From positions 62,001 to 126,000 of the IMG/VR virus record IMGVR_UViG_3300020469_003050: a stretch of 64,000 bases of DNA, one strand, 5' to 3'. Below the pieces are notes generated by a model. It was not told where the DNA came from and ran no database searches. It saw only the letters and a list, made by a program, of their open reading frames with translations. Positions 1-18,902 of the stretch are shown one piece after another. Position numbers and translations under genes: made by a program. How positions within the stretch are numbered: the stretch's first letter is position 1; each line of letters opens with the position of its first letter.

Positions 1-672
1 CGTTATGCAATGCTTATTTTTGATGATGAGGGTGTAAGAAAAGACGTAGATGGTAAACCTGGTAAAGTAAAAGCTATGGGTCTCGACTTGAAACGTAGTG
101 ATACTCCTGATTATATGCAGAACTTTTTGAGTGATGTTCTTGTTAAAATTTTAACAGACGGAACGGAACAAGACGTAATCGAAATGGTTAAAGAGTTTAA
201 AAAAGAATTCAGAGCAAAGCCTGGTTGGGAAAAGGGTACTCCTAAACGTGTTAACAATCTTACTATGTATAGAAATAAAGTAAAAAAGATTGCAAAGCAA
301 CAAGGCAAAGATTTCAAACTAGAAGGCGAAGATAATAAGAAAGATAAAATTCATTTGCCAGGTCATGTCAGTGCGGCTTTGAATTGGAATACATTACGTG
401 AACTTCATGCAGACAAATACTCTATTGAGATTGTTGATGGTATGAAAACTATTGTATGTAAACTAAAACCTAATGCGTTAAAAATGACAAGTGTTGCATA
501 TCCAATTGATGAAAAACGTATCCCTGAATGGTTTCAAGAACTTCCTTTTGATGATGAGTTAATGGAAGCAACAATCATTGATAAGAAACTAGATAATCTT
601 ATTGGTGTTCTTAAGTGGGACCTAAGTGATGCTGATGCATCTGAACAATTTACAAATCTATTTGAGTTTTAA
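1..672 (+). CDS. Family B DNA polymerase, C-terminal part (5' truncated; T4 gp43-like)
   Basis: Frame 1 is open from base 1 (RYAML..., tail of the PolB KKRYA motif); KAMGLDLKRSDTP matches the PolB K.KG.E..RS.TP motif; clamp-binding-like C-terminus (LFEF). Confidence 0.9.
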   Translation, partial: RYAMLIFDDEGVRKDVDGKPGKVKAMGLDLKRSDTPDYMQNFLSDVLVKILTDGTEQDVIEMVKEFKKEFRAKPGWEKGTPKRVNNLTMYRNKVKKIAKQQGKDFKLEGEDNKKDKIHLPGHVSAALNWNTLRELHADKYSIEIVDGMKTIVCKLKPNALKMTSVAYPIDEKRIPEWFQELPFDDELMEATIIDKKLDNLIGVLKWDLSDADASEQFTNLFEF

Positions 673-1455
673 ATGTGTAAAGTAGGAATAGTCGGGTCTA
701 GTTATAGTGTAGGCAGACATCATAATTATGAAACTAAAGAAAACAATTTAGCATTGCCTTTCGAAGAATGGCTAAATCAATACACAACTAATATAAAGTT
801 TTTTAATTCTGCTTGTTCAAGCAAAGGTACAGAACTTTACCTAAATAAGATTGTGTACTTAAAAGAAAAACATGACATTGATATTTTATTAATGGAGTTA
901 GTAAACAATAGGTCACAGTTGAACTTTAAATGTCTTAGTCAACCTTATAAAAGAATAGAAGAAGTAAGTGATATGTCTGTTATCGAAGATGATGTGTATA
1001 GAGATTCAGCATCTATGTATGAATTTATGAGAGCATTAACGCAAGATATGGAAGAAGACTGGTTTGCAAAAACTAAGAAGGCTTTTATGTATTGGAAAGA
1101 AACACAAGAACAAATGGCTGTAAGCAATATGTCATTAGAATTTTGGGGTATGTTAGATGTATATCAAGCAATCAAACTATGTAAACTATTGAATATAAAA
1201 GTTGTAACATGGCATAAGTCTTGGGACTTTTTTGTTCATCCAGGCTTTAAATCAATGTTGGGTGATTCACTGTATGTAGATTTTAATGGTAAGAATGCAC
1301 ACGATTATTACGCAGAAAAGTATGGTGAAGAAAAAATACTTTGTGATGAAACACACTTTAATGACTTTGCCAATGAAGAAATGGTAAGAGACTTTATTGC
1401 ACCTGTATTAGAAAGAGCAAAAAAGATTGTTAATGTTAACAGGATGTCAAGGTAA
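673..1455 (+). CDS. Hypothetical protein, SGNH/GDSL-like
   Basis: N-terminal GIVGSSYS and C-terminal DETH resemble SGNH blocks I and V. Confidence 0.45.
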   Translation: MCKVGIVGSSYSVGRHHNYETKENNLALPFEEWLNQYTTNIKFFNSACSSKGTELYLNKIVYLKEKHDIDILLMELVNNRSQLNFKCLSQPYKRIEEVSDMSVIEDDVYRDSASMYEFMRALTQDMEEDWFAKTKKAFMYWKETQEQMAVSNMSLEFWGMLDVYQAIKLCKLLNIKVVTWHKSWDFFVHPGFKSMLGDSLYVDFNGKNAHDYYAEKYGEEKILCDETHFNDFANEEMVRDFIAPVLERAKKIVNVNRMSR

Positions 1456-2000
1456 TGTCATACACTGAACTAATAAATCGTAGAGCAACTAATGAGTCTT
1501 CTGATGAATGTTACACTCCAGAAGACCAAGTTATGCCTTTACTCAAATACTTGGATAAGGAGAAAACTTATTATGAAGCGACTAGTGAAAGAAGTGGTAG
1601 CATTGTGTCGGGATTTCGAAAATTCGGTTATTCTATTGTGCCTTCTGGCTCTAGGGATTTCTTTGATTGTACACGGAGTGATGTCTTTGATGGCATTATA
1701 ACAAATCCACCGTATAGTAAGAAAGACCAGTTTTTAGAACACTGCTATTCTTTAGAAAAACCCTTTGCATTATTACTTCCTGTTACAAGTTTTCAGGGTG
1801 CGAAGCGAGGGAAGATGTTTATGGACAAGGGAATGTCTGCACTTGTGTATAACTATAGGATAGATTTTACTGGAAAAGGATCACCTACTTTTGGGAATGC
1901 TTGGTTTATATGGGGTTTTATGCCTCCTAATCAAATACATTGGGTAGATAATCCAGTAGCAGGAAAAGTTAAAAAGAGTATTGACATTGGTATTGATTAG
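1455..2000 (+). CDS. Putative N6-adenine DNA methyltransferase (small phage type)
   Basis: DECYTP near the N-terminus and NPPYS catalytic motif. Confidence 0.7.
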   Translation: MSYTELINRRATNESSDECYTPEDQVMPLLKYLDKEKTYYEATSERSGSIVSGFRKFGYSIVPSGSRDFFDCTRSDVFDGIITNPPYSKKDQFLEHCYSLEKPFALLLPVTSFQGAKRGKMFMDKGMSALVYNYRIDFTGKGSPTFGNAWFIWGFMPPNQIHWVDNPVAGKVKKSIDIGID

Positions 2001-2799: not shown

Positions 2800-4341
2800 G
2801 TGATTGACTTAGGTAGAAATAATCTAAGTTCCGGTTATGCAATCTTCTTGCCGGCTATTTCGAATTTCTATGTTCGTAAAATCTCTCAACATTATGCGGA
2901 CAAAACAGATATGTTCCCACCAGAACGTATTCCAAAAGGTTTCGAACACGGCTTAGACGGATTAAATATACTGGACAAAGATAAAGGCTATGTGCATTAT
3001 TCTCATGGTCTTTATTCGGCAGGTCATGCCAATCTTGATTTAGAAGGTTCTAAAATCGATGATGGAATGGTTGTCAATCGTAACAGAGAAAACACAGTAC
3101 TAGTAGGAGATTCAGGAGGCTATCAGATTGGTAGTGGTGCTTGGAAACTTGACTGGTCTCAGTTTGAAAATGGTGCAGATTGGCAAAAGACAAGATGTGG
3201 TATTATGACATGGTTAGAAGAATACTGTGATTATAGTATGACACTTGATATTCCTATGTGGGGTTATCTTCCACAGTATCGTGATAAAACAGGTTTAAAA
3301 TCTGCTGATGAATGTTTAGAGAAAACAATATTCAATCACAAATTTTTTATTGATAACCGTATCCCGGGTAAAACTAAGTTTCTCAATACACTACATGGTG
3401 CTAATTGGGATACTAGTGAGAAATGGTATCAGGCAGTCAAACAATTCAATGATCCTAAAGTCTATGGCGATAGAGCATTTGAAGGTTGGGCTATGGCTGG
3501 TGACCATGCCGGTGATGCAGAACTTCTGCTAAGGCGATTAATCACAATGCGTGATGATGGCATGTTAGCAGGTGACGATGTTTGGATACACGTTCTAGGC
3601 ATTAGCGTTCTCCCATGGGGTTGTTTCTTAACAGCCATTCAAAGACAACTAAGAGAGCATGTTAATCCAAATATCACAATATCTTTTGATGCGGCCTCTC
3701 CCTATATAACTGCATCTAAAGGTTTGGCATACGATTATCCTGACTTGAGCGGAGGTGCTTGGTCTTATAAAACTAAAAAGTTGAACTGGAGACAAGATAT
3801 TTCTAATCCGGATCAACCTTGGATGTATGAAGGTGCTATTGGTTCACGACTTAATATGCGTGATATCAACTACATGCAACCAGGTATGTTGAATAGGAAC
3901 AAGAAGGAAGCAAAATCAAGTTGGGATAGTCTATCCTATATATTAATTCAAGCACATAATACGGAGTATCATATTCGAGGTATGCAAGATGCATTACGTA
4001 GATTCGACCACGAATATGAAATGTTACGTGACAAGATTGATATTCACAACATGAATTTAGGTAAAACTAATGTGTTAAGTGATGTTGTACCTGATACAGT
4101 ATTGTACTTTGCAAAGTTTGTTGAAGAACTTTTTGTATCAGATAAACCAATGGACATGTTAAGTGATTTTAAAGCATTTTTACGTAAGTGTGAAGGATCA
4201 CGTGTTCAAAACATTTCGACAACTCCAGACTTTATGGAGTTTGAGGAAGCAAACGTTAAGACAGATGAATTTGTAGAAGCCGTAAAAGGTAAACGTAAAG
4301 AATACGAAACACCTGATACAGTATCAGACTTATTTGGTTAA
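2800..4341 (+). CDS. tRNA-guanine transglycosylase-like protein (DpdA-like 7-deazaguanine insertase)
   Basis: TGT motifs GDSGGYQI, MTLDIP, HVLG and SFDAASP; clustered with folE/queD/queE. Confidence 0.75.
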   Translation: MIDLGRNNLSSGYAIFLPAISNFYVRKISQHYADKTDMFPPERIPKGFEHGLDGLNILDKDKGYVHYSHGLYSAGHANLDLEGSKIDDGMVVNRNRENTVLVGDSGGYQIGSGAWKLDWSQFENGADWQKTRCGIMTWLEEYCDYSMTLDIPMWGYLPQYRDKTGLKSADECLEKTIFNHKFFIDNRIPGKTKFLNTLHGANWDTSEKWYQAVKQFNDPKVYGDRAFEGWAMAGDHAGDAELLLRRLITMRDDGMLAGDDVWIHVLGISVLPWGCFLTAIQRQLREHVNPNITISFDAASPYITASKGLAYDYPDLSGGAWSYKTKKLNWRQDISNPDQPWMYEGAIGSRLNMRDINYMQPGMLNRNKKEAKSSWDSLSYILIQAHNTEYHIRGMQDALRRFDHEYEMLRDKIDIHNMNLGKTNVLSDVVPDTVLYFAKFVEELFVSDKPMDMLSDFKAFLRKCEGSRVQNISTTPDFMEFEEANVKTDEFVEAVKGKRKEYETPDTVSDLFG

Positions 4342-4362
4342 CGATAAAAGGAGGAACTAACT

Positions 4363-5655
4363 ATGTTAGAAAAACTTTTTGGATTATCTAAAAAGAATAC
4401 GACCGTCAGAACGGAAGTTATGGCCGGTCTTGCGACATTCCTTACTATGGCATATATCACAGTCGTAAACCCTGCGATTTTGTCAACCGAAGGTACTGGA
4501 ATGGATTTTGGTGCAGTATTCACCGCTACAATTATTGCGGCGGTAGTGGGTACCTTAATCATGGGACTATGGGCTAATTGGCCTGTAGCACTTGCTCCAG
4601 GAATGGGACTGAATGCCTTCTTTGCATTCGGTGTTATTTTTGGTATGGGTTACACATATCAACAAGCATTAGCGGCTGTGTTTATCGCAGGTGTTGTGTT
4701 TCTTGGTTTGAGTATGACACCAGCACGAAGGTATATTATTAATAGTATCCCGAAAGGCATGAAGCTAGGTATAGGAGCAGGTATTGGTCTGTTCTTAGCT
4801 ATTATCGGTCTTAAGAATGCAGGTGTCGTTGTTGATAATCCAGCAACACTAGTTGGACTAGGAGACATTTCTAGTTGGCCAGTATTACTTGCAGGTCTAG
4901 GTTTTGCATTAATGGCAATCTTAGATAAGCGAGGAGTACCAGGTTCAATTATTATTGGTATCTTAGCCGTAAGTGTGATTGCTTGGATCACAGGTATCGC
5001 TGACCTTAATGGTGTAGTTGGTGCAGTTCCAAGTCCAGCACATGCATTTACATTAGACTTTAGTTTGATTGCAACAGCCGGTTTCATCGGTGTAGCATTT
5101 GCATTCTTATTTGTTGATTTCTTTGATACGGCAGGTACACTTACAAGTGTTGCCAACCTTACAGGGAAAGTGAATAAGAAGGGAGAAGTAGAAGGTATCG
5201 ACAGAGCCCTTCTAGCAGATTCAACTGCAACAACTATTGGTGCTTTAGCAGGTACTAGTAACACAACTTCATATATTGAAAGTGGTGCTGGTATTAAAGA
5301 AGGTGGTAAGACAGGATTAACTGCGGTTGTCGTAGCAATCTTGTTTGCATTGTGTTTGGTGTTAGCACCATTGGCACAAAGCATTCCAGCATATGCAACT
5401 GCACCTGCGTTAGTCTTTATCGCTACGTATTTCTTACGTAATCTTAAAGATATTAATTGGGATGATGTAAGTGAATATGCACCAGCAGTATTGGCGGCAA
5501 TTATCATGCCACTAACATTTAATATTGCTTATGGTATTGCTTTAGGCTTTATTGCTCATGTAGTAATCAAAGCGGCAAGTGGTAGACATAGTGAACTTAA
5601 TATGGGTTCTCTTGCTATTGCGGCAGTATCAGTACTCTATTTTGTAGTACAATAA
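4363..5655 (+). CDS. NCS2/AzgA family purine permease
   Basis: TEVMAGLATFLTMAYI..VNP, APGMGLNAFF, DFFDTAGT and YIESGAGI..GGKTGL; many TM segments. Confidence 0.92.
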   Translation: MLEKLFGLSKKNTTVRTEVMAGLATFLTMAYITVVNPAILSTEGTGMDFGAVFTATIIAAVVGTLIMGLWANWPVALAPGMGLNAFFAFGVIFGMGYTYQQALAAVFIAGVVFLGLSMTPARRYIINSIPKGMKLGIGAGIGLFLAIIGLKNAGVVVDNPATLVGLGDISSWPVLLAGLGFALMAILDKRGVPGSIIIGILAVSVIAWITGIADLNGVVGAVPSPAHAFTLDFSLIATAGFIGVAFAFLFVDFFDTAGTLTSVANLTGKVNKKGEVEGIDRALLADSTATTIGALAGTSNTTSYIESGAGIKEGGKTGLTAVVVAILFALCLVLAPLAQSIPAYATAPALVFIATYFLRNLKDINWDDVSEYAPAVLAAIIMPLTFNIAYGIALGFIAHVVIKAASGRHSELNMGSLAIAAVSVLYFVVQ

Positions 5656-5664
5656 GATAAGTAT

Positions 5665-5691
5665 TTATAGGGGAGCATTGTTCCCCTATAA
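5665..5691 (+). terminator. Hairpin after permease
   Basis: TTATAGGGGA-gcattgt-TCCCCTATAA inverted repeat. Confidence 0.5.
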
Positions 5692-5719
5692 TCCAACATT
5701 TTTAACTAAGGAGGACAAA

Positions 5720-5923
5720 ATGGCATCAGGACAAAGAGCATTCGCTAAAAAGAAAGCACACAGACTTGAAAAACTCAGAGCGGTCCACAGGGCACTTGAC
5801 AATCAGATTAAAAAAGATTATAATAAGTATCAAGACGTTCAAGGCAAAAAGGTTGAAAAATTGAAATTAAAAGAAGAAATTGTATCCCTAGAAAATGAAT
5901 TAGGGTCACAGTTAAATGGGTAG
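5720..5923 (+). CDS. Small coiled-coil protein (DUF465-like)
   Basis: GAGGA RBS before ATG 5720; HRALDNQI...KKVEKLKLKEEI pattern. Confidence 0.55.
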   Translation: MASGQRAFAKKKAHRLEKLRAVHRALDNQIKKDYNKYQDVQGKKVEKLKLKEEIVSLENELGSQLNG

Positions 5924-6368
5924 TTACTATAACTACATGCTAAACGAAAGTAGAAAGGCTAATATGGAAGATGATATTAAAAAACAAAAACAAAATGCAA
6001 CAAGATGGATTTGGGTTACATTTCAGAAAGAAGGTATACACAAGTATCCAGCGGCACTTGATGACCCTGCGTTAGCAACTGGCGATGAGTATGATGTTAG
6101 TTTTCTAGGATATCCTCATAGACATATCTTTCATTTTCGTGTAGCAATTACAGTTACACACAACGACAGGGATATTGAGTTTATTCAATTCAAACGTTGG
6201 CTAGAGAAACTATATGCAGAGAAGACTTTAGAACTAGATTACAAGTCATGTGAAATGATGAGTGATGATTTGTTTGATAAGATTGCAGATAAGTATCCCG
6301 GTCGTAGTGTTAAAATTGAAGTATCCGAAGATGGAGAAAATGGGGCTTTGATTGAATATGGAACTTGA
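5916..6368 (+). CDS. queD: QueD-like T-fold enzyme (6-carboxytetrahydropterin synthase-like)
   Basis: HKYP...HRHIFH metal-binding His motif, SCEMM and EVSEDGEN; in a folE/queE cluster. Confidence 0.65.
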   Translation: MGSYYNYMLNESRKANMEDDIKKQKQNATRWIWVTFQKEGIHKYPAALDDPALATGDEYDVSFLGYPHRHIFHFRVAITVTHNDRDIEFIQFKRWLEKLYAEKTLELDYKSCEMMSDDLFDKIADKYPGRSVKIEVSEDGENGALIEYGT

Positions 6369-6918
6369 TTATAAAAATTCTCTAGCAGAAGATATACAAG
6401 CAATGGTTCGGGTAGTTCCGGACCATCCTAAACCTGGCATCATGTATCAAGACATGGCAAGTATTTTTAATCACCAAGATGGTTTATCTAAATGCATGAC
6501 ACTTATAAAAGATTGGATGTATGCTACTCAAGTAGCTTATAATTACACTCGAATCGTAGGATTAGAAGCACGTGGGTTTCCTTTAGCAGGATACTTAAGT
6601 GCAGATATGAATAGACCATTTGCTATGGCTAGAAAAAAAGGCAAGTTACCAGGACCAACAATTTTTACAGAATATGAACTTGAATACGGTACGGACGAAC
6701 TACACCTACAAACTGATTCAGTGTTAGAAGGCGACCGTGTTCTAGTACTTGATGATGTTATTGCAACCGGTGGAACACTGGAAGCAGTAACGTCATTGAT
6801 TACACGTATGGGTGCAGAAACAATAGGAATAGGAAGTATAATGGACTTGACTTTCTTAGGTGGTTCTGCTAAACTAAAATCTAAGGGATACAATGTTTAT
6901 AGTATCTTAAAGGAGTAG
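6358..6918 (+). CDS. apt: Adenine phosphoribosyltransferase-like
   Basis: PDHPKPGI, GLEARGF, RKKGKLPG, YELEYG and PRPP motif VLDDVIATGGT. Confidence 0.9.
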   Translation: MELDYKNSLAEDIQAMVRVVPDHPKPGIMYQDMASIFNHQDGLSKCMTLIKDWMYATQVAYNYTRIVGLEARGFPLAGYLSADMNRPFAMARKKGKLPGPTIFTEYELEYGTDELHLQTDSVLEGDRVLVLDDVIATGGTLEAVTSLITRMGAETIGIGSIMDLTFLGGSAKLKSKGYNVYSILKE

Positions 6919-6919
6919 T

Positions 6920-7351
6920 ATGTTAATTAATATTTTATGGGCTTCAATGACTGGTAATGCAGAAGACGTTGCAGATAATTTTGAAGTGATTGCTAAGAAA
7001 AGAAATCATGAGGTCAACTTAGTTGAACTCAACGATGTAACTGCTGATAAACTACAAGAAATGAAACTTGCAGTTGTGGTTACATCAACTACAGGTGATG
7101 GTGATTTGCCTCATAATGGTGACGAGTTTTGGGATTGGTTAGAGAACTCAACTAGTCAATTTAAAAATCTTACATATTCTGTTTGTGCATTAGGTGATAG
7201 TTCACATCAGACTTTTTGTGGAGCAGGTAATAAAATAAACAGTAAACTAGATGAACTAGGTGCAACACGTATTAAAAATATTATAGAATGTGATTGTGGC
7301 ACTGAAGGTTCAGAAGAATGGTTTAAAGAACTACTAAAGGAAATTGAATGA
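6920..7351 (+). CDS. Flavodoxin
   Basis: SMTGNAE, TSTTGDGDLP and LGDSSH..FCGAG. Confidence 0.9.
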   Translation: MLINILWASMTGNAEDVADNFEVIAKKRNHEVNLVELNDVTADKLQEMKLAVVVTSTTGDGDLPHNGDEFWDWLENSTSQFKNLTYSVCALGDSSHQTFCGAGNKINSKLDELGATRIKNIIECDCGTEGSEEWFKELLKEIE

Positions 7352-8430
7352 TATATCTTGTAGATTTGGAAAGTGTTGAATCCCGCTACACTAAGCAATG
7401 GAAGACACATTTCCCAAAAGTTCTTGGAAGCAACGGTTTGAATGTGACGGTGATAGACGGCCCTAGGGCAGGCATTCCCGAAGCCACTACACCCGGTGCT
7501 TTTCTGAACTTTGGTGGTACAAACATCTACAAGGCGGCACAGATAACAAAAATATCTCAAATGTTTTGCGAAGGCAAAATCAAAGATGGTGATTACTTTT
7601 TGTATGCTGATGCCTGGAACCCTACAGTAATACAGTTAAAATATATGGCTGAATTACTTGGGGTGAAAATCCGGATTGGGGGTATGTGGCATGCAGGTTC
7701 GTATGACCCTCAAGACTTTCTAGGAAGATTGATAGGGAACCAACCATGGGTCCGAAATGCTGAAATGTCAATGTATGAATGTTTCGATGATAACTACTTT
7801 GCAACTAAATTTCATATTGACATGTTTACCCAGACATTTTTTGAGGACGATAGGGATATCGACCGGCAACTCCTTCACTCTATTCGACAAGTGGGTTGGC
7901 CTATGGAATATATAGAAAGCGATTTAGCAAACTATAAAGGTATGGCGAAAGAGGACATGATATTATTTCCTCACAGGTTAGCGCCTGAAAAGCAACCAGA
8001 AGTTTTTGACTATCTCTCAGAGCAAATGCCTGAGTATAATTGGGTAAAGTGTCAAGAACTTAATCTATCTAAGGAAGAATACCACACAATGCTTGGTAAG
8101 GCGAAAATGGTTTTTAGTGCCAACTTACAAGAGACTTTGGGTATATCTGTATTTGAAGGACTTGTAGTTGGTGCTATACCATTAGTACCAGACAGACTAT
8201 CTTATACAGAAATGTGGTCAGATACGTTTAAATATCCTAGTGAATGGACAACTAGTTTAGATGCAGTAAAAGAGAATATAGAACAGATTAAAACGCATAT
8301 TCGTATCTTAATGAATAAGAACTCAGATATGAGCGAATCTATGAATAAAGAAATTGAGAATGTACGTAACTTTTATTCAGTAAATGACTTAGTTACTGAA
8401 TTGCATAAATATAACGAAATTAATGATTGA
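7348..8430 (+). CDS. GT-B (family 1/4-like) glycosyltransferase
   Basis: FPHRLAPEKQP and QETLGISVFEG..GAIPLVP C-terminal GT-B motifs. Confidence 0.75.
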   Translation: MIYLVDLESVESRYTKQWKTHFPKVLGSNGLNVTVIDGPRAGIPEATTPGAFLNFGGTNIYKAAQITKISQMFCEGKIKDGDYFLYADAWNPTVIQLKYMAELLGVKIRIGGMWHAGSYDPQDFLGRLIGNQPWVRNAEMSMYECFDDNYFATKFHIDMFTQTFFEDDRDIDRQLLHSIRQVGWPMEYIESDLANYKGMAKEDMILFPHRLAPEKQPEVFDYLSEQMPEYNWVKCQELNLSKEEYHTMLGKAKMVFSANLQETLGISVFEGLVVGAIPLVPDRLSYTEMWSDTFKYPSEWTTSLDAVKENIEQIKTHIRILMNKNSDMSESMNKEIENVRNFYSVNDLVTELHKYNEIND

Positions 8431-8455
8431 CATTAAACTCCCACTCATGTATAAT
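8427..8455 (+). promoter_or_regulatory. Consensus sigma70 promoter upstream of folE
   Basis: TTGACA-N17-TATAAT, exact consensus. Confidence 0.75.
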
Positions 8456-8522
8456 AATAACTGTATATGGGTGGGTTTACCACCATACAGTATACAACTA
8501 AAATATAAGGAACATAGTATAA

Positions 8523-9200
8523 ATGAAAAAGACTTCCGAAATAATCAGAGAGCGGATCAAATCTGCTAAAGGCAAGTTTCATAGTAACGATAATATAGCC
8601 GATTTCATCGAACCGGGTGAAATGGAATCACTTCAAAACGAAGTACAAACTTCAATGCAACAAGTATTAGAAAGTTTAGTTATCGATACAGAGAACGACC
8701 ACAACACACAAGAAACCGCAAAACGTGTAGCTAAAATGTTTTTACATGAAACATTTGGTGGGCGTTATGTACCAGAACCAAGAGTAACAAGTTTTCCTAA
8801 TATGGGATATAACAACTTGTATACGACAGGTCCAATTACTATTCGTAGTACTTGTGCCCATCACTTTCAAAATATTGTAGGTAGATGTTGGGTAGGTATC
8901 TTTCCAGAAGAAGAAGTTATTGGACTATCTAAGTTTAATAGACTTGTTCATCACATTGCAGAAAGACCTCAAATTCAAGAAGAAATGACAACACAAATTG
9001 CGGAGAAACTTGTACAGTATTCTAAGACTCCAAACGTTGCAGTTGTTGTTAAAGCAGAACATCATTGCATGACACATAGAGGTGTTAAAGAACACGAAAG
9101 CGATATGACTACGGCAATTATGTTAGGCAAATTTAGAGAGGATTCAAATCTTAAGCAAGAGTTTTATAATCTAATGCTTAGTATGAAAGGGCACAAATAG
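8523..9200 (+). CDS. folE: GTP cyclohydrolase I
   Basis: TAKRVAKM, STCAHH, GLSKFNR, PQIQE and HHCM..RGV. Confidence 0.95.
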   Translation: MKKTSEIIRERIKSAKGKFHSNDNIADFIEPGEMESLQNEVQTSMQQVLESLVIDTENDHNTQETAKRVAKMFLHETFGGRYVPEPRVTSFPNMGYNNLYTTGPITIRSTCAHHFQNIVGRCWVGIFPEEEVIGLSKFNRLVHHIAERPQIQEEMTTQIAEKLVQYSKTPNVAVVVKAEHHCMTHRGVKEHESDMTTAIMLGKFREDSNLKQEFYNLMLSMKGHK

Positions 9201-9201
9201 A

Positions 9202-10098
9202 ATGAAACTGAGATATTCAGAAGCATTCTATTCTGTACAAGGTGAAGGCAAATATGTAGGAGTACCTAGTGTATTTTTACGTACTTTTGGTTGTAACTTT
9301 CGATGCATGAACTTTGGTTTAGATAGAAGTGAACCAATGCGTGATGAAAAACACAAAATGGGCAATCGTTACAATGACGAAGTAAAAGATTTAATTGATA
9401 AAGGAGTACACGAAACAACAAAAGAATTTGAAGATTTACCAATCATACACACAGGCTGTGATACATACGCAAGTATCTATCCTGAATTTAAAAAATTCAA
9501 TATGCAAAGAACTGTGGATGAAGTTGTTGAACATTTATTAAGTTTAACACCTAATGGTAAATGGGTTCAAGATAACGGACAAGACGTTCATTTAATTATG
9601 ACAGGCGGTGAACCATTGTTAGCATGGCAACGATTGTACATCGACTTGTTTGAACACGAAAGGATGCAAGACTTAAAAAATGTTACATTTGAAACAAACA
9701 CTACACAAAGTTTATACCCAGAGTTTAAAGAATATCTCTCAACTAGGGCAAGATTTAAAACAACATTTAGTTGCTCTCCAAAACTCCCAGTTTCGGGAGA
9801 ACCTTGGGACACTGCTATCAAACCTGATATCGCTAGTGATTACAGTAACGTTCCTGGGTCTAGTATGTATTTTAAGTTTGTTGTTTCTGATAGTACAGAT
9901 GTTGATGATGCTGATAGAGCCGTCAAAGAGTATCGTGCAGTGGGTATTGAATGCCCTGTATACCTTATGCCTTTGGGTGGTAGAAGTGAAGAATATAATC
10001 TTACAATCAAAGATGTGGCAGAACTTTGCATGGAGAAAGGGTGGCGGTTCACGCCAAGATTACACATCAGCCTTTTCGGGAATGCCTGGGGAACCTAG
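9202..10098 (+). CDS. queE: 7-carboxy-7-deazaguanine synthase (radical SAM)
   Basis: FYSVQGEG, FLRTFGCNFRC...GCDT, TGGEPL, SPKL and RLH. Confidence 0.92.
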   Translation: MKLRYSEAFYSVQGEGKYVGVPSVFLRTFGCNFRCMNFGLDRSEPMRDEKHKMGNRYNDEVKDLIDKGVHETTKEFEDLPIIHTGCDTYASIYPEFKKFNMQRTVDEVVEHLLSLTPNGKWVQDNGQDVHLIMTGGEPLLAWQRLYIDLFEHERMQDLKNVTFETNTTQSLYPEFKEYLSTRARFKTTFSCSPKLPVSGEPWDTAIKPDIASDYSNVPGSSMYFKFVVSDSTDVDDADRAVKEYRAVGIECPVYLMPLGGRSEEYNLTIKDVAELCMEKGWRFTPRLHISLFGNAWGT

Positions 10099-10222: not shown

Positions 10223-11371
10223 ATGAATAACTATATTTTTACAAGCGAAAGTGTTAGTTGTGGACATCCTGACAAAGTAGCAGACCAAATTAGTGATGCA
10301 CTAGTTGATGCTGGACTTAAAGCAGGTGATGAAACAACACGTGTAGCCATTGAGACACTTGTAACTACCAACCATGTTACGTTGGCGGGCGAAGTAAAAA
10401 ACTTTAATGTGAGCGATGATGAAATAAAAGAGATTGTTCGTAACAAAGTTAAAGAAATCGGATATGAACAAGTAGGATTTCATTGGGATAAACTAAAAAT
10501 CTATAATGAAATTCATGCACAGAGTGGTGACATTGGATTAGGTACTGATGATTTCGGTGCTGGTGACCAAGGACTTATGTTTGGTTATGCATCAAATGAA
10601 ACATCAAGTATGATGCCTGCTCCGATACATTATGCACATGAACTACTAAAAGCATTGAAACGTTTAAGAGTAGAAGAAGGATATGAGTACATACAACCTG
10701 ACTCAAAGTCTCAGGTAAGTTTACAATATGAAGGTGGCAAGGTAAAACGTGTAGACCAAGTGGTGGTCTCGTCACAACATAGTCCTCAATACGAACATTC
10801 TATCAGAATGCCTCTATCGAACATTGTACACGAAGTATTAGGAGATTTAGTTGACAATGATACAGTCAAACATTACAACCCTACAGGAAAATTTGAAATC
10901 GGTGGGCCTGACGGTGATACAGGACTTACAGGAAGAAAAATTATTGTGGATACCTATGGTGGTTTTGCTCCTCACGGTGGGGGTGCTTTTAGTGGAAAAG
11001 ATCCTACGAAAGTAGATAGGTCAGCGGCTTATATGGCACGTTGGTTAGCTAAGAACGTAGTAGCAGATAACATGGCAGATTGGTGTCAGATACAATTATC
11101 ATATGCTATTGGTGTAAAAGAACCTACTAGCATTTATGTAGATAGTAATGGACACAATCGTAGTATTCAAAGGTTTATTAGAGATAATATCGACTTGACA
11201 CCTAAAGGTATTATTGATAGATTTGATTTATTTAATTTTTATAAGTACAGTGAAAATTGTGTTTATGGTCACTTTGGTGACAAGAAAGTTCCATGGGAAC
11301 ATGTAGGGTGGAACGGTGTACAGTATGAAGATGCTGATTCACTAGAAGCTGAAATAAATGAAGGATGTTAG
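10223..11371 (+). CDS. metK: S-adenosylmethionine synthetase
   Basis: FTSESV..GHPDK, GAGDQG, GLTGRKIIVDTYGG and GGGAFSGKDPTKVDRS. Confidence 0.97.
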   Translation: MNNYIFTSESVSCGHPDKVADQISDALVDAGLKAGDETTRVAIETLVTTNHVTLAGEVKNFNVSDDEIKEIVRNKVKEIGYEQVGFHWDKLKIYNEIHAQSGDIGLGTDDFGAGDQGLMFGYASNETSSMMPAPIHYAHELLKALKRLRVEEGYEYIQPDSKSQVSLQYEGGKVKRVDQVVVSSQHSPQYEHSIRMPLSNIVHEVLGDLVDNDTVKHYNPTGKFEIGGPDGDTGLTGRKIIVDTYGGFAPHGGGAFSGKDPTKVDRSAAYMARWLAKNVVADNMADWCQIQLSYAIGVKEPTSIYVDSNGHNRSIQRFIRDNIDLTPKGIIDRFDLFNFYKYSENCVYGHFGDKKVPWEHVGWNGVQYEDADSLEAEINEGC

Positions 11372-11374: not shown

Positions 11375-11713
11375 ATGTTTTATAAAACAAATGATGATGC
11401 ATTAGGTATTACAGTTAAAGAATTCGTTGATGAATGGTATGAAAAACAAGATTATATTCTTGTAGATATCAGAGATACAGAGGAACGTCAAAGTGCAGGT
11501 ACAGTTAAACAAACGTTTAACATTTCAATGTACGAAATACCTGACCAAATTGAAATGGCACCGACACATATCGTGTGTTTGATGTTATGTCAGGATAGCA
11601 CTAAGGCAGAACAAGTTACTAAGTATCTCAAAAATAATGGATATAATAATATGATTTATATTGAGGGAGGTATTGACGAATTATTAAAGGCTGTGCCTGA
11701 ATTGAAAGGATAA
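11375..11713 (+). CDS. Rhodanese-like domain protein
   Basis: LVDIR..EE, active-loop-like LCQDSTKA and YIEGGI. Confidence 0.75.
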   Translation: MFYKTNDDALGITVKEFVDEWYEKQDYILVDIRDTEERQSAGTVKQTFNISMYEIPDQIEMAPTHIVCLMLCQDSTKAEQVTKYLKNNGYNNMIYIEGGIDELLKAVPELKG

Positions 11714-11717: not shown

Positions 11718-12182
11718 ATGGATATAATGAAACCAAAGACTTGGTTTAAGTCAGAAGAAGAAACTGCCAGAGACCAAGCTAGATTGATAAAAGATGAAAA
11801 AGAACGTGATATTGCGTTAGCTGGTGTCGATTTAAAATACGGTCATATTACAAATAATGACCATGATAAGAAAGTAGCAACTTTAAAAGGTGAACCTTGG
11901 GTTAAAGTACTAAAGATGGAACTTGAACTGAATAAACCTGGTTCAGGCTTCTTTGAGATTGACTTTAACGAAGACTTTGTAGAGTATCTTGCAGACAATG
12001 GTTACGAAGGAAAAGACAACGATGCTATTGTAGATAGTTGGTTCAATGACTTATGTAAAAACATTGTAATGGAAGGCCTTGAAGACGAAGAAGGTACAAC
12101 AAAAACTGCTGATACTAAGAGCAAAGATGGTGTAATCATTCAACGACTAAAAACCGGTGATGATACTGCCGAATACTCTTGA
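11718..12182 (+). CDS. Hypothetical phage protein
   Basis: 154-aa ORF in operon. Confidence 0.6.
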   Translation: MDIMKPKTWFKSEEETARDQARLIKDEKERDIALAGVDLKYGHITNNDHDKKVATLKGEPWVKVLKMELELNKPGSGFFEIDFNEDFVEYLADNGYEGKDNDAIVDSWFNDLCKNIVMEGLEDEEGTTKTADTKSKDGVIIQRLKTGDDTAEYS

Positions 12183-12237: not shown

Positions 12238-13239
12238 ATGGCTACATTTATTCTTGTTGATAGTTTCAACATGTATCATAGAGCAAAACACGTAGCAATG
12301 CGTGGTGCGAATGTCGATATGAAAATCGGTATGGCTTTTCACATTATGATGAGTAGTGTCAAAATGTGTTATAACAAGTTCAATGCCGACCATGCAGTAT
12401 TTTGTTTAGAAGGACGTAGTTGGCGTAAAGACTTTTATGAACCTTATAAAGCAAATCGTAAGATTGCACGTGAGGCTTTGTCAGTACGTGAACAAGAAGA
12501 AAATCAAATCATGTTTGATGCATATGATAGCATGGTTGAATTCTTAAATAATAAAACTAATGTAACTATGTTGCACAATAAACAAGCAGAAGCAGATGAT
12601 ATGATTGCTTTGTTTATTGAATCACATCCAGATGATGAACATATTATTGTATCAAGTGATAGCGATTACATGCAACTAATACAAGACAATGTAAAGATTT
12701 ATGATGGTGTACAAAATCGTATCATTACTAAAGAAGGGTTCTTTAAAGATGATAAGAACATGACACCAATGAAAGACAAAAAGACTAAAGAACTTCTCCC
12801 TGCTCCAGACCCTGAGTGGTTACTGTTTGAGAAATGTATTCGTGGTGATACAAGTGATAATATCTTTAGTGCATATCCAGGTGTGCGTAAGAAAGGATCT
12901 CGTAACAAAACAGGAATGGTTGAAGCATTTGAAGACAAAGAAACAGGTGGATTCAATTGGAATAACTTCATGTTACAAAAGTGGACAGACCATAACGGTG
13001 TTGAACATACAGTACGTGAAGACTATGAACGTAACGAGAAACTTATCAATCTAACTGCACAACCAACAGAATTAAAAGTAGATTTCGTTCAGACTATTGC
13101 AGATGCAAGTCAACCTAAGAAAGTAGCAGGTGTAGGCATTAACTTTCTAAAATGGTGTGGCGAATGGGACTTACAAAATTTATCAAAGGCGCCTGATGAA
13201 ATGGCGGCTATCTTAAACAAAGCATATCCACATCAATGA
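12238..13239 (+). CDS. rnh: T4-like RNase H / 5'-3' flap exonuclease
   Basis: SWRKDFY..YKANR, EADD, SSDSDY.QL and GDTSDNI. Confidence 0.9.
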   Translation: MATFILVDSFNMYHRAKHVAMRGANVDMKIGMAFHIMMSSVKMCYNKFNADHAVFCLEGRSWRKDFYEPYKANRKIAREALSVREQEENQIMFDAYDSMVEFLNNKTNVTMLHNKQAEADDMIALFIESHPDDEHIIVSSDSDYMQLIQDNVKIYDGVQNRIITKEGFFKDDKNMTPMKDKKTKELLPAPDPEWLLFEKCIRGDTSDNIFSAYPGVRKKGSRNKTGMVEAFEDKETGGFNWNNFMLQKWTDHNGVEHTVREDYERNEKLINLTAQPTELKVDFVQTIADASQPKKVAGVGINFLKWCGEWDLQNLSKAPDEMAAILNKAYPHQ

Positions 13240-13946
13240 AACATTACATATTTGACGTAGACGGAACACTTACACCTAGTAGAGGTAAGATAGACACTGG
13301 CTTCTTAAACTTCTTTAATGAGTTTGTAGAAGAAAACAATGTTTATCTTGCAACGGGTAGTGATGCTCCTAAGACTATTGAACAAATCGGACAACCATTA
13401 TTTAACTCAGTTATCAAAGTTTATAACTGTAGTGGTAATTCAGTTTGGGAAAAAGGTAATAACATCTATAATAATGATTGGGTGTTGCCTCCTGTTCCAA
13501 AGATATTTCTGCAAAGGCAACTTGATGAAAGTAAATTTCCATTAAGAACTGGTACACATTTTGATGCAAGACCAGGCTTACTAAACTTTAGTATAATTGG
13601 TAGAGGTGCTGATACTAAACAAAGAGAAGAATATGTTAAGTATGATACCGAAACAAAAGAACGATGGATTATAGCAAAAGAATTCAATGAAAATTTTAGA
13701 AACGAGAATGTAGTAGCCCAGGTCGCTGGTGAAACTGGTTTAGATATTATGCCTATAGGTAAGGGAAAACAACAAATCATTAATGACTTTAATGAGTCAG
13801 ATAATATCATCTTTGTAGGTGATAAGACTATGGAAGGCGGAAATGATTATGACATTTCAGAAGCAGTAAAGAAACTAGAAAATGGTCAGAGTTATCAAGT
13901 TGAAGACTATGCAGACACATGGGACTTATTGTGCAGGATAGGCTAA
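13236..13946 (+). CDS. HAD-IIB phosphomannomutase (eukaryotic PMM-like)
   Basis: FDVDGTLTPSR, TGSD, NFSIIGR and GDKT..GGND. Confidence 0.85.
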   Translation: MKHYIFDVDGTLTPSRGKIDTGFLNFFNEFVEENNVYLATGSDAPKTIEQIGQPLFNSVIKVYNCSGNSVWEKGNNIYNNDWVLPPVPKIFLQRQLDESKFPLRTGTHFDARPGLLNFSIIGRGADTKQREEYVKYDTETKERWIIAKEFNENFRNENVVAQVAGETGLDIMPIGKGKQQIINDFNESDNIIFVGDKTMEGGNDYDISEAVKKLENGQSYQVEDYADTWDLLCRIG

Positions 13947-15980: not shown

Positions 15981-16090
15981 TGTCAAATTTACATTACGTA
16001 ACTTTTTTGACACCGTGGAAAAGACCGACAAGAAAGGATAAATACATTTGTACGAAGTTAATTCGTGCAAATGGTTTCAATGGGTATTAA

Positions 16091-16585
16091 ATGTATACAA
16101 CAGAAATTATAAAAGACAAGTTTTGGATACTGGAAGATGCTGGAGTTAAACTCGGCACTATCAGAAAAGAAGATAGTACTTCTAACTTTGAAGTAATCAT
16201 GAGGAGTAAAGGTGTTGACTACCTAGACCTTGATGCTCTCACAACAAAGTATGGTAAGGCCATCTTAACACCGAAACTTGTCAATAAAATAGACAGTGTA
16301 GAATACGGAAAGGCACTTGACGAAGTTAATGGTTATCCGTGCAAACACAAGGCTTGTAACTCAGGTATGGAAGAGAAATCTGGAAAACAAATACCTGTTT
16401 ACACAAAGAGTGATACAAGCAAAACATATTATGCCGCTGGCTATTATGGCCTACATTTTAGTGGCGTTTGGCGTAATACGTATTGTGTCAAATTAGAAAC
16501 ATTGGATAATTATGAATTCGTCGGTCCATTCAAGACTAAGACAGAACTTGAAGCAGAGGTACTAAAAGCTAGTAAACAAGATTAA
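16091..16585 (+). CDS. Hypothetical phage protein
   Basis: 164-aa ORF preceded by GATAAATA and a hairpin (16045-16073). Confidence 0.6.
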   Translation: MYTTEIIKDKFWILEDAGVKLGTIRKEDSTSNFEVIMRSKGVDYLDLDALTTKYGKAILTPKLVNKIDSVEYGKALDEVNGYPCKHKACNSGMEEKSGKQIPVYTKSDTSKTYYAAGYYGLHFSGVWRNTYCVKLETLDNYEFVGPFKTKTELEAEVLKASKQD

Positions 16586-16773: not shown

Positions 16774-16786
16774 AAGGAGAATCTGA

Positions 16787-18058: not shown

Positions 18059-18129
18059 ATATAAGTTAACTACGAACATTTATCATTAAATTTAGATAAA
18101 TACAAGTAGTAAAATAACAAGGAATTCAT

Positions 18130-18800: not shown

Positions 18801-18836
18801 AAATAGTTGATTTTATTGGATAATTAATTAGGTCCA

Positions 18837-18892: not shown

Positions 18893-18902
18893 AAATGAAA
18901 AT

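What the first reader, a model, noticed from the sequence alone, without database searches (positions are those of the whole stretch)
2800..10098. 7-deazaguanine DNA-modification locus with a glycosyltransferase and no QueC
Seen: a TGT/DpdA-like gene directly after the clamp, plus QueD-like, FolE and QueE, with a GT-B glycosyltransferase immediately before folE. No QueC, QueF or ArcS is in the window, and the TGT-like protein shows no CxCxxC zinc motif. Known: FolE-QueD-QueE makes CDG, and phage DpdA swaps deazaguanines into DNA to resist restriction. Inference: CDG or a derivative is inserted and then glycosylated, which would be a new hypermodified base.
Basis: partly seen in the sequence, partly recalled or inferred. 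Interest (0 to 1): 0.8.

Follow-up and report, generated by a model that had tools for sequence, protein, structure and literature searches.

The report
Phage deazaguanine DNA-modification locus with glycosyltransferase
A marine jumbo-phage gene cluster that makes a 7-deazaguanine base and swaps it into the phage's own DNA always carries a sugar-adding enzyme next to the base-tailoring gene, so these phages (and the Pseudomonas phage PA5oct) may have a sugar-decorated G substitute that nobody has yet identified chemically.

Summary
The observation largely holds. Window 2800-10098 (+) encodes a TGT/DpdA-fold transglycosylase directly after the polB fragment and sliding clamp. It keeps all three catalytic Asp and has no CxCxxC. 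FolE, a QueE variant and a GT-B/GT4 glycosyltransferase with an intact EX7E motif are also present. No QueC, QueF or ArcS was found in the window.

One correction matters. The "QueD-like" gene is DpdL, the QueD paralogue proposed to decarboxylate CDG to 7-deazaguanine (motif LxxxHRHxF). No canonical QueD was found in the window.

In all 43 related viral contigs spanning DpdA to QueE, DpdL, GT and FolE are present. 41 of the 43 have a purine PRTase, APRT-like or Gpt-like but never both.

The same DpdA-GT-DpdL-QueE set occurs in PA5oct-group phages, Phosso, ACP17 and Xanthomonas BUDD. GT and DpdL also lie close together in Xanthomonas X1 and Burkholderia BCSR5. PA5oct DNA is reported to carry an unidentified modified G.

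Glycosylation of the deazaguanine is therefore well motivated but unproven. A plain dDG product and a tubercidin-like nucleotide route remain open. Verdict: a new variant of a known kind, of high interest.

The parts
10..672 (+). C-terminal part of family-B DNA polymerase (context; start of the conserved polB-clamp-DpdA order)
   Evidence: BLASTP to the polB ORFs of L004 (91%), L006, PA5oct, Phosso; Pfam DNA_pol_B on the full gene in L004/L006
2041..2796 (+). Sliding clamp (gp45/PCNA-like)
   Evidence: Atlas: nearest named clusters are gp45-slide_C/PCNA_N at 0.93-0.95, and the nearest cluster's model has TM 0.83 to PCNA; Phosso homologue annotated as sliding clamp
2800..4341 (+). Long, Zn-motif-less TGT/DpdA-family transglycosylase (predicted DNA guanine to deazaguanine exchange enzyme)
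   Evidence: AF2 pLDDT 81. VIA Z 20 to TGT 6yry. BFVD matches include nt-1 DpdA2 and phiST DpdA3. D104, D150 and D297 are invariant. No CxCxxC
4363..5655 (+). NCS2/AzgA-type nucleobase permease (accessory; only in the window's close relatives)
   Evidence: Pfam Xan_ur_permease 1.5e-52. Best tblastn matches (53%) lie under genes annotated yieG, inorganic anion transporter. Present in 1 of 80 related loci plus L004/L005
5678..5923 (+). Small DUF465-like protein, function unknown
   Evidence: Weak Pfam DUF465 hit; a DUF465 gene follows DpdA in L006 too
5796..5824 (+). Perfect sigma-70 consensus promoter ahead of DpdL
   Evidence: TTGACA-17-TATAAT. One of only two in 64 kb (expected 0.03). The same placement before DpdL occurs in 20 of 75 related loci
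5916..6368 (+). DpdL: T-fold QueD paralogue, proposed 7-carboxy-7-deazaguanine decarboxylase
   Evidence: Motif LGYPHRHIF matches LxxxHRHxF. tblastn to ACP17 DpdL 57%, phiST DpdL 31%, PA5oct 60%, Phosso 70%. No Pfam PTPS hit
6352..6918 (+). APRT-like purine phosphoribosyltransferase
   Evidence: NCBIfam adenine PRT NF002636 1.6e-50, above its cut-off. Mutually exclusive with a Gpt-like PRTase in relatives; 41 of 43 loci have one or the other
6920..7351 (+). Flavodoxin (likely reductant for radical-SAM QueE)
   Evidence: Pfam Flavodoxin_1 8e-31. Absent from the 91%-identical relative L004. Its role is an inference
7348..8430 (+). GT-B / GT4-like glycosyltransferase, core partner of DpdL
   Evidence: AF2 pLDDT 84. 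Z 24 to sucrose-phosphate synthase and Z 22-23 to BshA. EX7E (E262/E270) and R210/K215 invariant. Co-occurs with DpdL in 78 of 80 loci
8427..8455 (+). Perfect sigma-70 consensus promoter ahead of FolE
   Evidence: the same placement occurs in 30 of 62 related loci
8523..9200 (+). GTP cyclohydrolase I (FolE)
   Evidence: Pfam 2.6e-46; NCBIfam FolE 2.5e-48, below that model's curated cut-off
9202..10098 (+). QueE-type radical-SAM CDG synthase with an insertion of about 50 aa inside the cluster motif
   Evidence: PHROG 2076 QueE-like 2.8e-52; NCBIfam and PDB QueE hits to the N-terminus. C31, C35 and C86-D87, and the GG of TGGE, are invariant in an alignment with phage QueEs
10223..11371 (+). SAM synthetase MetK (possible cofactor supply; accessory)
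   Evidence: Three Pfam MetK domains, 1e-32 to 1e-57; present in 8 of 80 related loci
11718..12182 (+). Conserved 154-aa protein of unknown function that follows QueE
   Evidence: Homologues in 49 of 80 loci, always after QueE, and in PA5oct and Phosso. Only viral clusters without a named family in the Atlas
13236..13946 (+). Phosphomannomutase (possible supply of sugar-1-phosphate for the GT donor; uncertain)
   Evidence: Pfam PMM 1.8e-23; within 10 kb of the GT in 20 of 80 loci

Best explanation
This is a DpdL-type 7-deazaguanine DNA-modification module of a jumbo phage of about 340 kb, with a glycosyltransferase as a core member.

Proposed mechanism:
1. FolE turns GTP into dihydroneopterin triphosphate.
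2. A CPH4 synthase not encoded in the window (host QueD, or a gene elsewhere in the genome) makes CPH4.
3. The QueE variant, probably reduced by the adjacent flavodoxin, makes 7-carboxy-7-deazaguanine (CDG).
4. DpdL, as proposed for phage phiST, converts CDG to 7-deazaguanine.
5. The GT4 enzyme, transcribed with DpdL, puts a sugar on that base. This may happen on the free base or after insertion.
6. The long DpdA-family transglycosylase, encoded straight after polB and the clamp, exchanges guanine in phage DNA for the deazaguanine.
7. The purine phosphoribosyltransferase (APRT-like here, Gpt-like in most relatives) removes and recycles the released guanine. Alternatively it activates the deazapurine.

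Shown: the folds, the catalytic motifs, the synteny and the promoter placement.
Inferred: every substrate, the order of the steps, and the glycosylated product.
For: - DpdA fold and all three catalytic Asp.
- DpdL signature motif and homology.
- FolE and QueE.
- GT4 fold with intact EX7E and R/K donor motifs.
- All 43 loci spanning DpdA to QueE have DpdL, GT and FolE, and 41 have a purine PRTase.
- GT and DpdL are more conserved across relatives (56-64% and 58-78%) than DpdA (30-45%) or polB (52-58%).
- Perfect sigma-70 promoters lie before DpdL and FolE, never before GT.
- The same DpdA, GT, DpdL and QueE set occurs in the PA5oct group, Phosso, ACP17 and Xanthomonas BUDD. GT and DpdL lie within a few kb of each other in Xanthomonas X1 and Burkholderia BCSR5.
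- Heterologous DpdA plus DpdL from ACP17 gave no dDG, and the authors suggested that other enzymes may be missing (PMC10516641).
- Sugar-metabolism genes vary nearby: PMM in 20 of 80 loci, an epimerase-like gene in PA5oct, and GFO/IDH/MocA in one relative.
Against: - No chemistry is known for any GT-carrying phage.
- 7-deazaguanine has no obvious O- or N-nucleophile at C7, so the acceptor atom is unclear.
- phiST makes plain dDG with DpdL and no GT. Several phages with close DpdL homologues (RHph_I1_18, Bakedbeans, Ahp1) gave no GT hit.
- The GT family is acidic (median pI 5.2), unlike what one would expect of a DNA-binding enzyme.
- No QueD was found in the window or within 10 kb in 80 relatives.
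- DpdL's decarboxylase activity is itself only predicted.
- Most of the synteny comes from one viral lineage, so part of it reflects shared descent.
Confidence: 0.55

Rival explanations
1. Plain dDG, or another non-glycosylated deazaguanine, is the final DNA base, as in phiST. The GT serves something else, such as a pterin or other small-molecule glycoside, or a cell-envelope or virion glycan. It would then only be genetically linked to the locus.
For: phiST has 100% dDG with DpdL and no GT. Some phages have close DpdL homologues without a GT hit. The GT's nearest folds are generic GT4 enzymes acting on small molecules and lipids. The GT family has an acidic pI.
Against: The GT is present in 43 of 43 complete loci, shares a transcription unit with DpdL, and is more conserved than the replication proteins. 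All GT homologues of at least 40% identity in cultured phages sit beside DpdL, with DpdA and QueE in the same locus. ACP17 DpdA plus DpdL alone gave no dDG.
Confidence: 0.25
2. A pre-replicative, tubercidin-like nucleotide route. The PRTase joins CDG (or DG) to PRPP and DpdL decarboxylates, giving 7-deaza-GMP. This is converted to the dNTP and incorporated by the phage polymerase. The TGT-like protein would have a secondary role (proofreading, exchange or tRNA).
For: A purine PRTase is present in 41 of 43 complete loci and in PA5oct. Two unrelated PRTase types replace each other. In tubercidin biosynthesis, which lacks QueC, TubE couples CDG with PRPP and TubF then decarboxylates (PMC6112128; bioRxiv 2026.04.15.718813). 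HIT and MazG genes lie next to the PRTase in relatives, and MazG lies next to DpdL in phiST.
Against: The DpdA-like enzyme keeps every catalytic residue under strong conservation and is universal in the loci. No PRTase was seen in the ACP17 or BUDD clusters. No dedicated kinase or reductase for the analogue was identified. The window's PRTase scores as a typical adenine PRT.
Confidence: 0.15
3. The TGT-like enzyme modifies tRNA (host or phage) rather than DNA.
For: Its closest solved folds are tRNA-guanine transglycosylases.
Against: The gene is embedded between the clamp and replication genes in 66 or more of 80 loci. The window has no tRNA genes. The N-terminal and Zn features of tRNA TGTs are missing. 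A PA5oct-family member shows modified G in DNA. It matches phage DpdA2/DpdA3 models.
Confidence: 0.05

Closest known systems
phiST / ACP17-type dDG system (FolE, QueD, QueE, DpdL, DpdA; Cui et al. 2023, PMC10516641)
   Same: No QueC. The DpdL has the LxxxHRHxF motif. FolE and QueE are present. A DpdA-family transglycosylase lies next to replication genes. ACP17 even has the GT homologue (gp124, 40% identical) between its DpdA and DpdL.
   Different: phiST has no GT and has a short DpdA3 (259 aa). The window has no QueD, a 513-aa DpdA of a different subfamily, a GT4, a purine PRTase, a permease, flavodoxin and MetK. The product of the GT-carrying clusters has never been determined.
Pseudomonas jumbo phage PA5oct (Wroclawvirus) locus EST35_0314-0325
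   Same: Same order: clamp, DpdA-like (36%), GT (44%), DpdL (60%), PRTase, QueE, x154 homologue, RNase H. DNA with a restriction-resistant modified G.
   Different: PA5oct has a Gpt-like rather than APRT-like PRTase and an epimerase-like gene. It has no FolE, permease, flavodoxin or MetK in the locus.
Bacterial DpdA and tRNA-guanine transglycosylase (TGT)
   Same: TIM-barrel TGT fold. The general acid/base, base-recognition and nucleophile Asp are all conserved.
   Different: The CxCxxC...H zinc site, conserved in bacterial DpdA and TGT, is reduced to the His alone. There is no Pfam TGT hit. The protein has about 130 extra residues, including a disordered acidic C-terminal tail.
Tubercidin biosynthesis (TubC/A/B, TubE PRTase, TubF decarboxylase)
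   Same: A QueC-less pathway that uses CDG, a phosphoribosyltransferase and a decarboxylation step.
   Different: TubF is a UbiD enzyme, not a T-fold protein. Tubercidin clusters lack any nucleic-acid transglycosylase and any GT, and their product is a free nucleoside.
Glycosylated 7-deazaguanines: huimycin/dapiramicin (HuiG) and mannosyl-/galactosyl-queuosine in tRNA (QTMAN, a GT4-like enzyme)
   Same: A glycosyltransferase decorates a 7-deazaguanine derivative. QTMAN appears among the GT4 fold matches.
   Different: The QTMAN matches are no better than those to other GT4 enzymes. The acceptors there are the 2-amino group of a preQ0 derivative, or the cyclopentenediol of queuosine, which this pathway cannot make. 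Neither occurs in DNA.

Membership tests
TGT/DpdA transglycosylase superfamily | TGT-type (beta/alpha)8 barrel fold | tested here: met
   VIA Z 20.0/18.8/18.1 to TGT and QTRT2, against about 11 for other barrels. Foldseek E 3.5e-7
TGT/DpdA transglycosylase superfamily | Three invariant active-site Asp (general acid/base, base recognition, nucleophile) | tested here: met
   D104 (GDSGGYQ), D150 (LDIP) and D297 (SFDAAS) correspond to E. coli D89, D143 and D264. All are invariant in 39 sequences
TGT/DpdA transglycosylase superfamily | Structural Zn site CxCxxC...H | tested here: not met
   No CxCxxC and no Cys in residues 300-390; H386 is retained. The motif is also absent from the ACP17 DpdA2-type, BUDD and phiST DpdA3 proteins
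TGT/DpdA transglycosylase superfamily | Guanine exchange on DNA | not testable with these tools
   Supported only indirectly, by the replication-module context and by the modified G in PA5oct
Named phage DpdA subfamilies (DpdA1-4) | Sequence-level membership in a described subfamily | tested here: inconclusive
   No BLAST link to the ACP17 DpdA (listed in the DpdA2 column) or to phiST DpdA3. hhalign gives only weak, motif-consistent matches. Foldseek is nearer to nt-1 DpdA2 (6e-9) than to phiST DpdA3 (1e-3). The Vibrio 2.275.O homologue was not listed as a DpdA in 2019
DpdL (proposed CDG decarboxylase) | LxxxHRHxF in place of QueD's CxxxHGH | tested here: met
   L64-G-Y-P-H-R-H-I-F72
DpdL (proposed CDG decarboxylase) | Homology to phiST and ACP17 DpdL | tested here: met
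   57% identity to ACP17 (1e-36) and 31% to phiST (6e-11)
DpdL (proposed CDG decarboxylase) | [quoted passage not shown] | tested here: inconclusive
   DpdA, FolE and QueE are present and QueC is absent. QueD was not found in the window or within 10 kb in 80 relatives. The rest of the genome could not be read
DpdL (proposed CDG decarboxylase) | CDG decarboxylase activity | not testable with these tools
   Not demonstrated even for the founding members
QueD (CPH4 synthase) | CxxxHGH motif with catalytic Cys; Pfam PTPS | tested here: not met
   Cys is replaced by Leu. There is no PF01242 hit, and a QueD HMM does not detect it
GT-B / CAZy GT4-like glycosyltransferase | Two-Rossmann GT-B fold | tested here: met
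   Z 24.1 (6kih) and Z 22-23 (BshA) over 300 or more residues
GT-B / CAZy GT4-like glycosyltransferase | EX7E and Arg/Lys donor-binding motifs | tested here: met
   E262...E270 and R210/K215 are invariant in 30 sequences. The motif definition comes from general knowledge of GT4
GT-B / CAZy GT4-like glycosyltransferase | Pfam Glycos_transf_1 above the gathering score | tested here: not met
   18.4 bits against a cut-off of 26.4
QueE (CDG synthase) | Radical-SAM three-Cys cluster motif and SAM-binding GGE | tested here: met
   C31, C35 and C86-D87 are invariant; of TGGE, T134-G135-G136 are invariant and E137 is not (phiST has Ser). There is an unusual insertion of about 50 aa between Cys2 and Cys3. 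PHROG QueE-like 2.8e-52. All NCBIfam QueE hits are far below their curated cut-offs
Adenine phosphoribosyltransferase | NCBIfam equivalog score above cut-off | tested here: met
   NF002636 scores 171 bits against a cut-off of 125, but is below the cut-off for four other APRT models. Base specificity was not tested

The most novel reading that the evidence does not exclude
The GT4 enzyme attaches a sugar to a 7-deazaguanine made by FolE, QueE and DpdL. The Zn-less DpdA installs that base in place of G, or the GT decorates it once in DNA. This would be the first glycosylated purine analogue in any genome. It would be present in a very abundant group of marine jumbo phages and in cultured phages of Pseudomonas, Acidovorax, Xanthomonas, Burkholderia and Sinorhizobium. 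A coupled purine PRTase would recycle the displaced guanine into new precursor.
Probability: 0.4. Interest if true: 0.9.

Novelty: new variant of a known kind. Interest (0 to 1): 0.72.

Why it matters
Eight 7-deazaguanine bases are known in phage DNA. None is glycosylated, and all known DNA glycosylation is on pyrimidines.

This module is very common.

It also occurs in PA5oct-group phages, which have been proposed for phage therapy. Their DNA carries an unidentified modified G that decides sensitivity to restriction enzymes and END nucleases.

Identifying the base would do three things:
- explain why DpdA plus DpdL alone failed in heterologous tests;
- define a further DpdA lineage that lacks the Zn motif;
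- show whether guanine salvage is coupled to base exchange.

PA5oct and ACP17 are cultivable, so the question can be tested directly.

Tried and rejected
- Megablast of the locus against 50,697 phage records found nothing.
- Pfam, PHROG, NCBIfam and PDB sequence searches of the 513-aa protein found nothing. Only fold comparison identified it.
- hhalign of the family profile against single E. coli TGT or ACP17 DpdA sequences gave low probabilities (5-6%). The registers were consistent with the motifs, so I used them only to map residues.
- A pterin-glycoside reading (FolE, PTPS-like enzyme and GT) was considered. I ranked it low because QueE and DpdA are universal in the loci. No pteridine glycosyltransferase appeared among the top Swiss-Prot fold matches.
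- A special relationship of the GT to tRNA-queuosine mannosyltransferase is rejected. Those matches are no better than matches to other GT4 enzymes.
- The missing zinc motif is rejected as evidence against DpdA function, because other phage DpdAs lack it too.
- The 154-aa conserved protein gave no functional lead.
- I started a whole-genome scan of PA5oct for QueD and QueC and stopped after the first 50 kb because of its cost in output. The END-nuclease preprint reports a separate PTPS gene in PA5oct.
- Supplementary tables of Cui et al. 2023 are not held in the library.
- I found no paper on a glycosylated deazaguanine in DNA.
- I did not use the sequencing-run tools. Short-read contigs cannot show base chemistry.

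Full report
**What the window is**

The window has about 35% G+C. It carries a family-B polymerase fragment, replication genes and many auxiliary metabolic genes. The window's own GT protein occurs on a contig of 342,717 bp, and a 91%-identical relative of the DpdA-like protein on one of 336,430 bp. The source is therefore a jumbo phage of about 340 kb known from metagenomes. Megablast finds no close cultured relative.

**Gene map, all on the + strand**

| Coordinates | Gene |
|---|---|
| 10-672 | polB C-terminus |
| 673-2000 | two ORFs resembling a split DNA methyltransferase |
| 2041-2796 | sliding clamp |
| 2800-4341 | 513-aa TGT/DpdA-like protein |
| 4363-5655 | nucleobase permease |
| 5678-5923 | small DUF465-like protein |
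| 5916-6368 | T-fold protein (DpdL) |
| 6352-6918 | APRT-like phosphoribosyltransferase |
| 6920-7351 | flavodoxin |
| 7348-8430 | glycosyltransferase |
| 8523-9200 | FolE |
| 9202-10098 | QueE |
| 10223-11371 | MetK |
| 11375-11713 | rhodanese |
| 11718-12182 | conserved unknown (x154) |
| 12238-13239 | 5'-3' exonuclease / RNase H |
| 13236-13946 | phosphomannomutase |

These assignments rest.

**The transglycosylase**

The 513-aa protein matches no profile library and no PDB sequence. It does have about 2,700 homologues in metagenomes.

An AF2 model built from 39 homologues (pLDDT 81) aligns to Zymomonas TGT at Z 20 and to QTRT1/2 at Z 18. Generic TIM barrels reach only about Z 11.

Among viral models it matches its Vibrio phage 2.275.O homologue, an 'Achromobacter phage Motura TGT', a Vibrio phage nt-1 protein of DpdA2-like size (E 6e-9), actinophage DpdAs, and a phiST protein of the same length as DpdA3 (E 1e-3).

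Read against E. coli TGT:
- GDSGGYQ corresponds to TDSGGFQ (D104 = D89).
- LDIP corresponds to FDEC (D143).
- SFDAASP corresponds to MFDCVMP (D297 = D264, the nucleophile).
- AHN corresponds to IHN (H386 = H333).

The hhalign register agrees for the second half of the protein. All three Asp are invariant in the family. They are the residues shown to be essential in bacterial DpdA (PMC10164549).

It is equally absent from the ACP17 DpdA (placed in the DpdA2 column of Hutinet 2019 Supplementary Data 1), the BUDD DpdA and phiST DpdA3. This is a feature of several phage lineages, not a sign of inactivity.

**The 'QueD-like' gene is DpdL**

The 150-aa protein reads ...SFLGYPHRHIFHF.... Cui et al. 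2023 define DpdL by exactly this change, from CxxxHGH in QueD to LxxxHRHxF. They propose that DpdL decarboxylates CDG to 7-deazaguanine, the base that fully replaces G in phiST.

tblastn links the window protein to several DpdL genes:

| Phage | Identity |
|---|---|
| Phosso | 70% |
| PA5oct | 60% |
| ACP17 | 57% |
| phiST | 31% |

A QueD HMM built from three phage QueDs detects no ORF in the window, in the 80 related loci, or in the PA5oct, Phosso or Vibrio loci I held. BLASTP with phage QueC, QueF, Gat and YhhQ also finds nothing. Pfam scans of nearly all the larger window ORFs show no QueC, QueF or ArcS domain.

So QueC really is absent from the window, but the CPH4 synthase step is missing as well.

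**FolE and QueE**

FolE is canonical.

QueE is a variant. The three cluster cysteines (C31, C35, C86) are conserved, and the GG of the TGGE motif is invariant. About 50 residues are inserted between the second and third Cys. PA5oct, Vibrio 2.275.O and BUDD share this insertion; ACP17 and phiST do not.

Flavodoxin is the usual reductant of QueE, by established knowledge, and SAM is its cofactor. The adjacent flavodoxin and MetK therefore fit a supporting role. They are accessory, however: flavodoxin is missing in the 91% relative, and MetK occurs in 8 of 80 loci.

**The glycosyltransferase**

The AF2 model (pLDDT 84) is a GT-B fold. It is closest to retaining GT4 enzymes: sucrose-phosphate synthase at Z 24, then BshA, glycogen synthase and PglA. 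E262-x7-E270 and R210/K215 are invariant, so it looks like an active enzyme that uses an NDP-sugar.

At least 8,000 homologues exist.

**Is the GT part of the system?**

I fetched 80 IMG/VR loci by GT similarity (54-94% identity).

| Gene | Loci with it (of 80) |
|---|---|
| DpdL | 78 |
| DpdA-like | 72 |
| FolE | 62 |
| QueE | 51 |

The absences mostly fall where a contig end cuts the locus short. Of the 43 loci that span DpdA to QueE, all 43 have DpdL, GT and FolE.

GT and DpdL are the best-conserved proteins of the locus.

Perfect TTGACA-17-TATAAT promoters occur only twice in the 64-kb window, and both are in this locus: before DpdL and before FolE (expected 0.03). In the relatives they recur at these positions:

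| Gene downstream | Loci with a perfect promoter |
|---|---|
| clamp | 24 of 65 |
| DpdL | 20 of 75 |
| FolE | 30 of 62 |
| RNase H | 16 of 48 |
| DpdA | 0 of 67 |
| GT | 0 of 78 |

This suggests three units: clamp-DpdA, DpdL-GT and FolE-QueE.

Most of these loci belong to one viral lineage, so part of the synteny reflects shared descent. Independent support comes from unrelated cultured phages:
- PA5oct group: DpdA-like, then GT (44%), then DpdL (60%), then a PRTase, then QueE.
- Phosso: clamp, a gene annotated 'glycosylase', DpdL, GT, FolE and QueE. Its DpdA-like gene lies 170 kb away.
- ACP17: QueD, FolE, gp122, DpdA, GT (40%), DpdL, QueE.
- Xanthomonas BUDD: the same set, in the order GT, DpdA, DpdL, QueE.
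- Xanthomonas X1 and Burkholderia BCSR5: GT and DpdL hits within a few kb of each other. I did not inspect their neighbouring genes.

These rest.

DpdL also occurs without a GT (the phiST group, RHph_I1_18 and others). The GT is therefore an add-on to the DpdL pathway, not a requirement for it.

**Experimental anchor**

A 2025 preprint (PMC12191111) reports several things about PA5oct:
- The authors infer a modified G.
- It carries QueE and a PTPS gene.
- It is restricted by END nucleases that sense hypermodified bases.

The base was not identified.

Cui et al. could not obtain dDG from ACP17 or phiST DpdA plus DpdL in E. coli, and suggested that other enzymes may be needed. For ACP17, the conserved GT is an obvious candidate.

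I found no report of a glycosylated deazaguanine in DNA.

**The phosphoribosyltransferase**

The window's enzyme scores as an adenine PRT and is found only in the window's sub-lineage. Most relatives, and PA5oct (EST35_0321), instead carry a short PRTase that aligns with E. coli Gpt.

Of the 43 complete loci, 41 have one or the other and none has both. This pattern looks like one enzyme type displacing another in the same role, so a purine PRTase appears to be functionally part of the module.

Two roles are possible:
- *Guanine removal and recycling.* Base exchange releases one guanine per inserted base. Converting it to GMP would pull the exchange forward and refill the GTP pool for FolE. This is inference.
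- *Activation of the deazapurine.* TubE does this with CDG and PRPP in tubercidin biosynthesis. That pathway also lacks QueC and follows with a decarboxylation.

The second role supports a nucleotide-level rival route.

The permease is confined to the window's closest relatives and is probably a salvage accessory.

**Where the sugar would go**

This is the weakest link. Decarboxylated 7-deazaguanine has no side-chain nucleophile.

Precedents exist for glycosylating deazaguanines: on the 2-amino group (huimycin), and on queuosine in tRNA by a GT4-like enzyme. Neither occurs in DNA.

The GT family is acidic, with a median pI of 5.2. That weakly favours a soluble acceptor, meaning glycosylation before insertion.

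Sugar-metabolism genes vary near the locus: PMM, an epimerase-like gene in PA5oct, and GFO/IDH/MocA with HIT in relatives. This variation fits a glycosylation step whose donor is tailored.

**Verdict**

The gene identities needed correcting, and the product is unknown.

The locus is best described as a GT- and PRTase-containing variant of the DpdL-type deazaguanine DNA-modification system, using a long DpdA that lacks the Zn motif.

| Claim | My estimate |
|---|---|
| It is a DpdA-based deazaguanine DNA-modification module | about 0.8 |
| The GT glycosylates that base | about 0.4-0.45 |

Noticed in passing
window 5796-5824 and 8427-8455 (+): These are the only two perfect sigma-70 consensus promoters in the 64-kb window (expected 0.03). 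One lies just before DpdL and the other just before FolE. Related loci repeat this placement and also put such promoters before the clamp and RNase H genes.
   Followed up: yes
window 4200-4341 (DpdA-like C-terminus) and 583-672 (polB C-terminus): The disordered tail of the DpdA-like protein carries a conserved (L/F)(F/M)E(V/F)E motif. In the window's lineage it ends ...SDLFG, and polB ends ...TNLFEF. These could be clamp-binding tails, which would tether base exchange to the replisome. The gene order polB-clamp-DpdA is conserved.
   Followed up: partly
window 9202-10098: This QueE has an insertion of about 50 residues between the second and third cysteines of the radical-SAM cluster motif. 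PA5oct, Vibrio phage 2.275.O and Xanthomonas BUDD share the insertion; ACP17 and phiST do not.
   Followed up: partly
window 673-1455 and 1455-2000 (+): Two abutting ORFs (260 and 181 aa). The second matches the middle of a DNA methyltransferase PHROG (2e-30) and weakly matches Eco57I. This may be a split or two-subunit DNA methyltransferase between polB and the clamp. Close relatives keep the same arrangement.
   Followed up: partly
window 33597-46188 (-): Seven radical-SAM ORFs lie in one same-strand block, three of them with SPASM domains. Nearby are two Asp/Arg beta-hydroxylase-like genes, and further along a carbamoyltransferase (49940-51505), a 925-aa protein with a weak GT2 hit (47125-49902) and a cupin. 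This is an unusual maturase-like or glycan-tailoring cluster for a phage.
   Followed up: no
window 15006-27935 (+): A run of auxiliary genes: an SbmA/BacA-like transporter, an HtrA-like protease with PDZ, a MoxR-type AAA ATPase, an AMP-binding enzyme, a tryptophan-halogenase-like flavoprotein, a fatty-acid desaturase, a beta-ketoacyl synthase and a DUF2201 VWA/metallopeptidase.
   Followed up: no
window 30172-31571 (+): DHFR and a canonical thymidylate synthase are present, and no dCMP/dUMP hydroxymethylase was seen in the scanned ORFs. Thymine and cytosine are probably unmodified, so the GT is unlikely to serve a hydroxymethyl-pyrimidine.
   Followed up: partly
L006 12455-12973; L007 6297-6695 (ACP17 gp122); 36 of 43 complete related loci: A protein of 130-170 aa with unknown fold lies just upstream of DpdL, or upstream of DpdA in ACP17. 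It is a further near-core member of the module. It is missing exactly in the window's sub-lineage, which is where the APRT-like gene replaces the Gpt-like PRTase.
   Followed up: partly
L003 (Vibrio phage 2.275.O) 8815-10605: This phage pairs the same long DpdA-like family with QueC, QueF, a YhhQ-like transporter and FolE, which is a preQ1-type set. It has no GT or DpdL in the locus fetched. The 2019 survey lists it as having no DpdA. The DpdA family is therefore not tied to the DpdL/GT chemistry.
   Followed up: partly
window 31500-32000: Coding strand and GC skew both switch sign near 31.5 kb, from + strand genes to - strand genes, and switch back near 53-54 kb.
   Followed up: no
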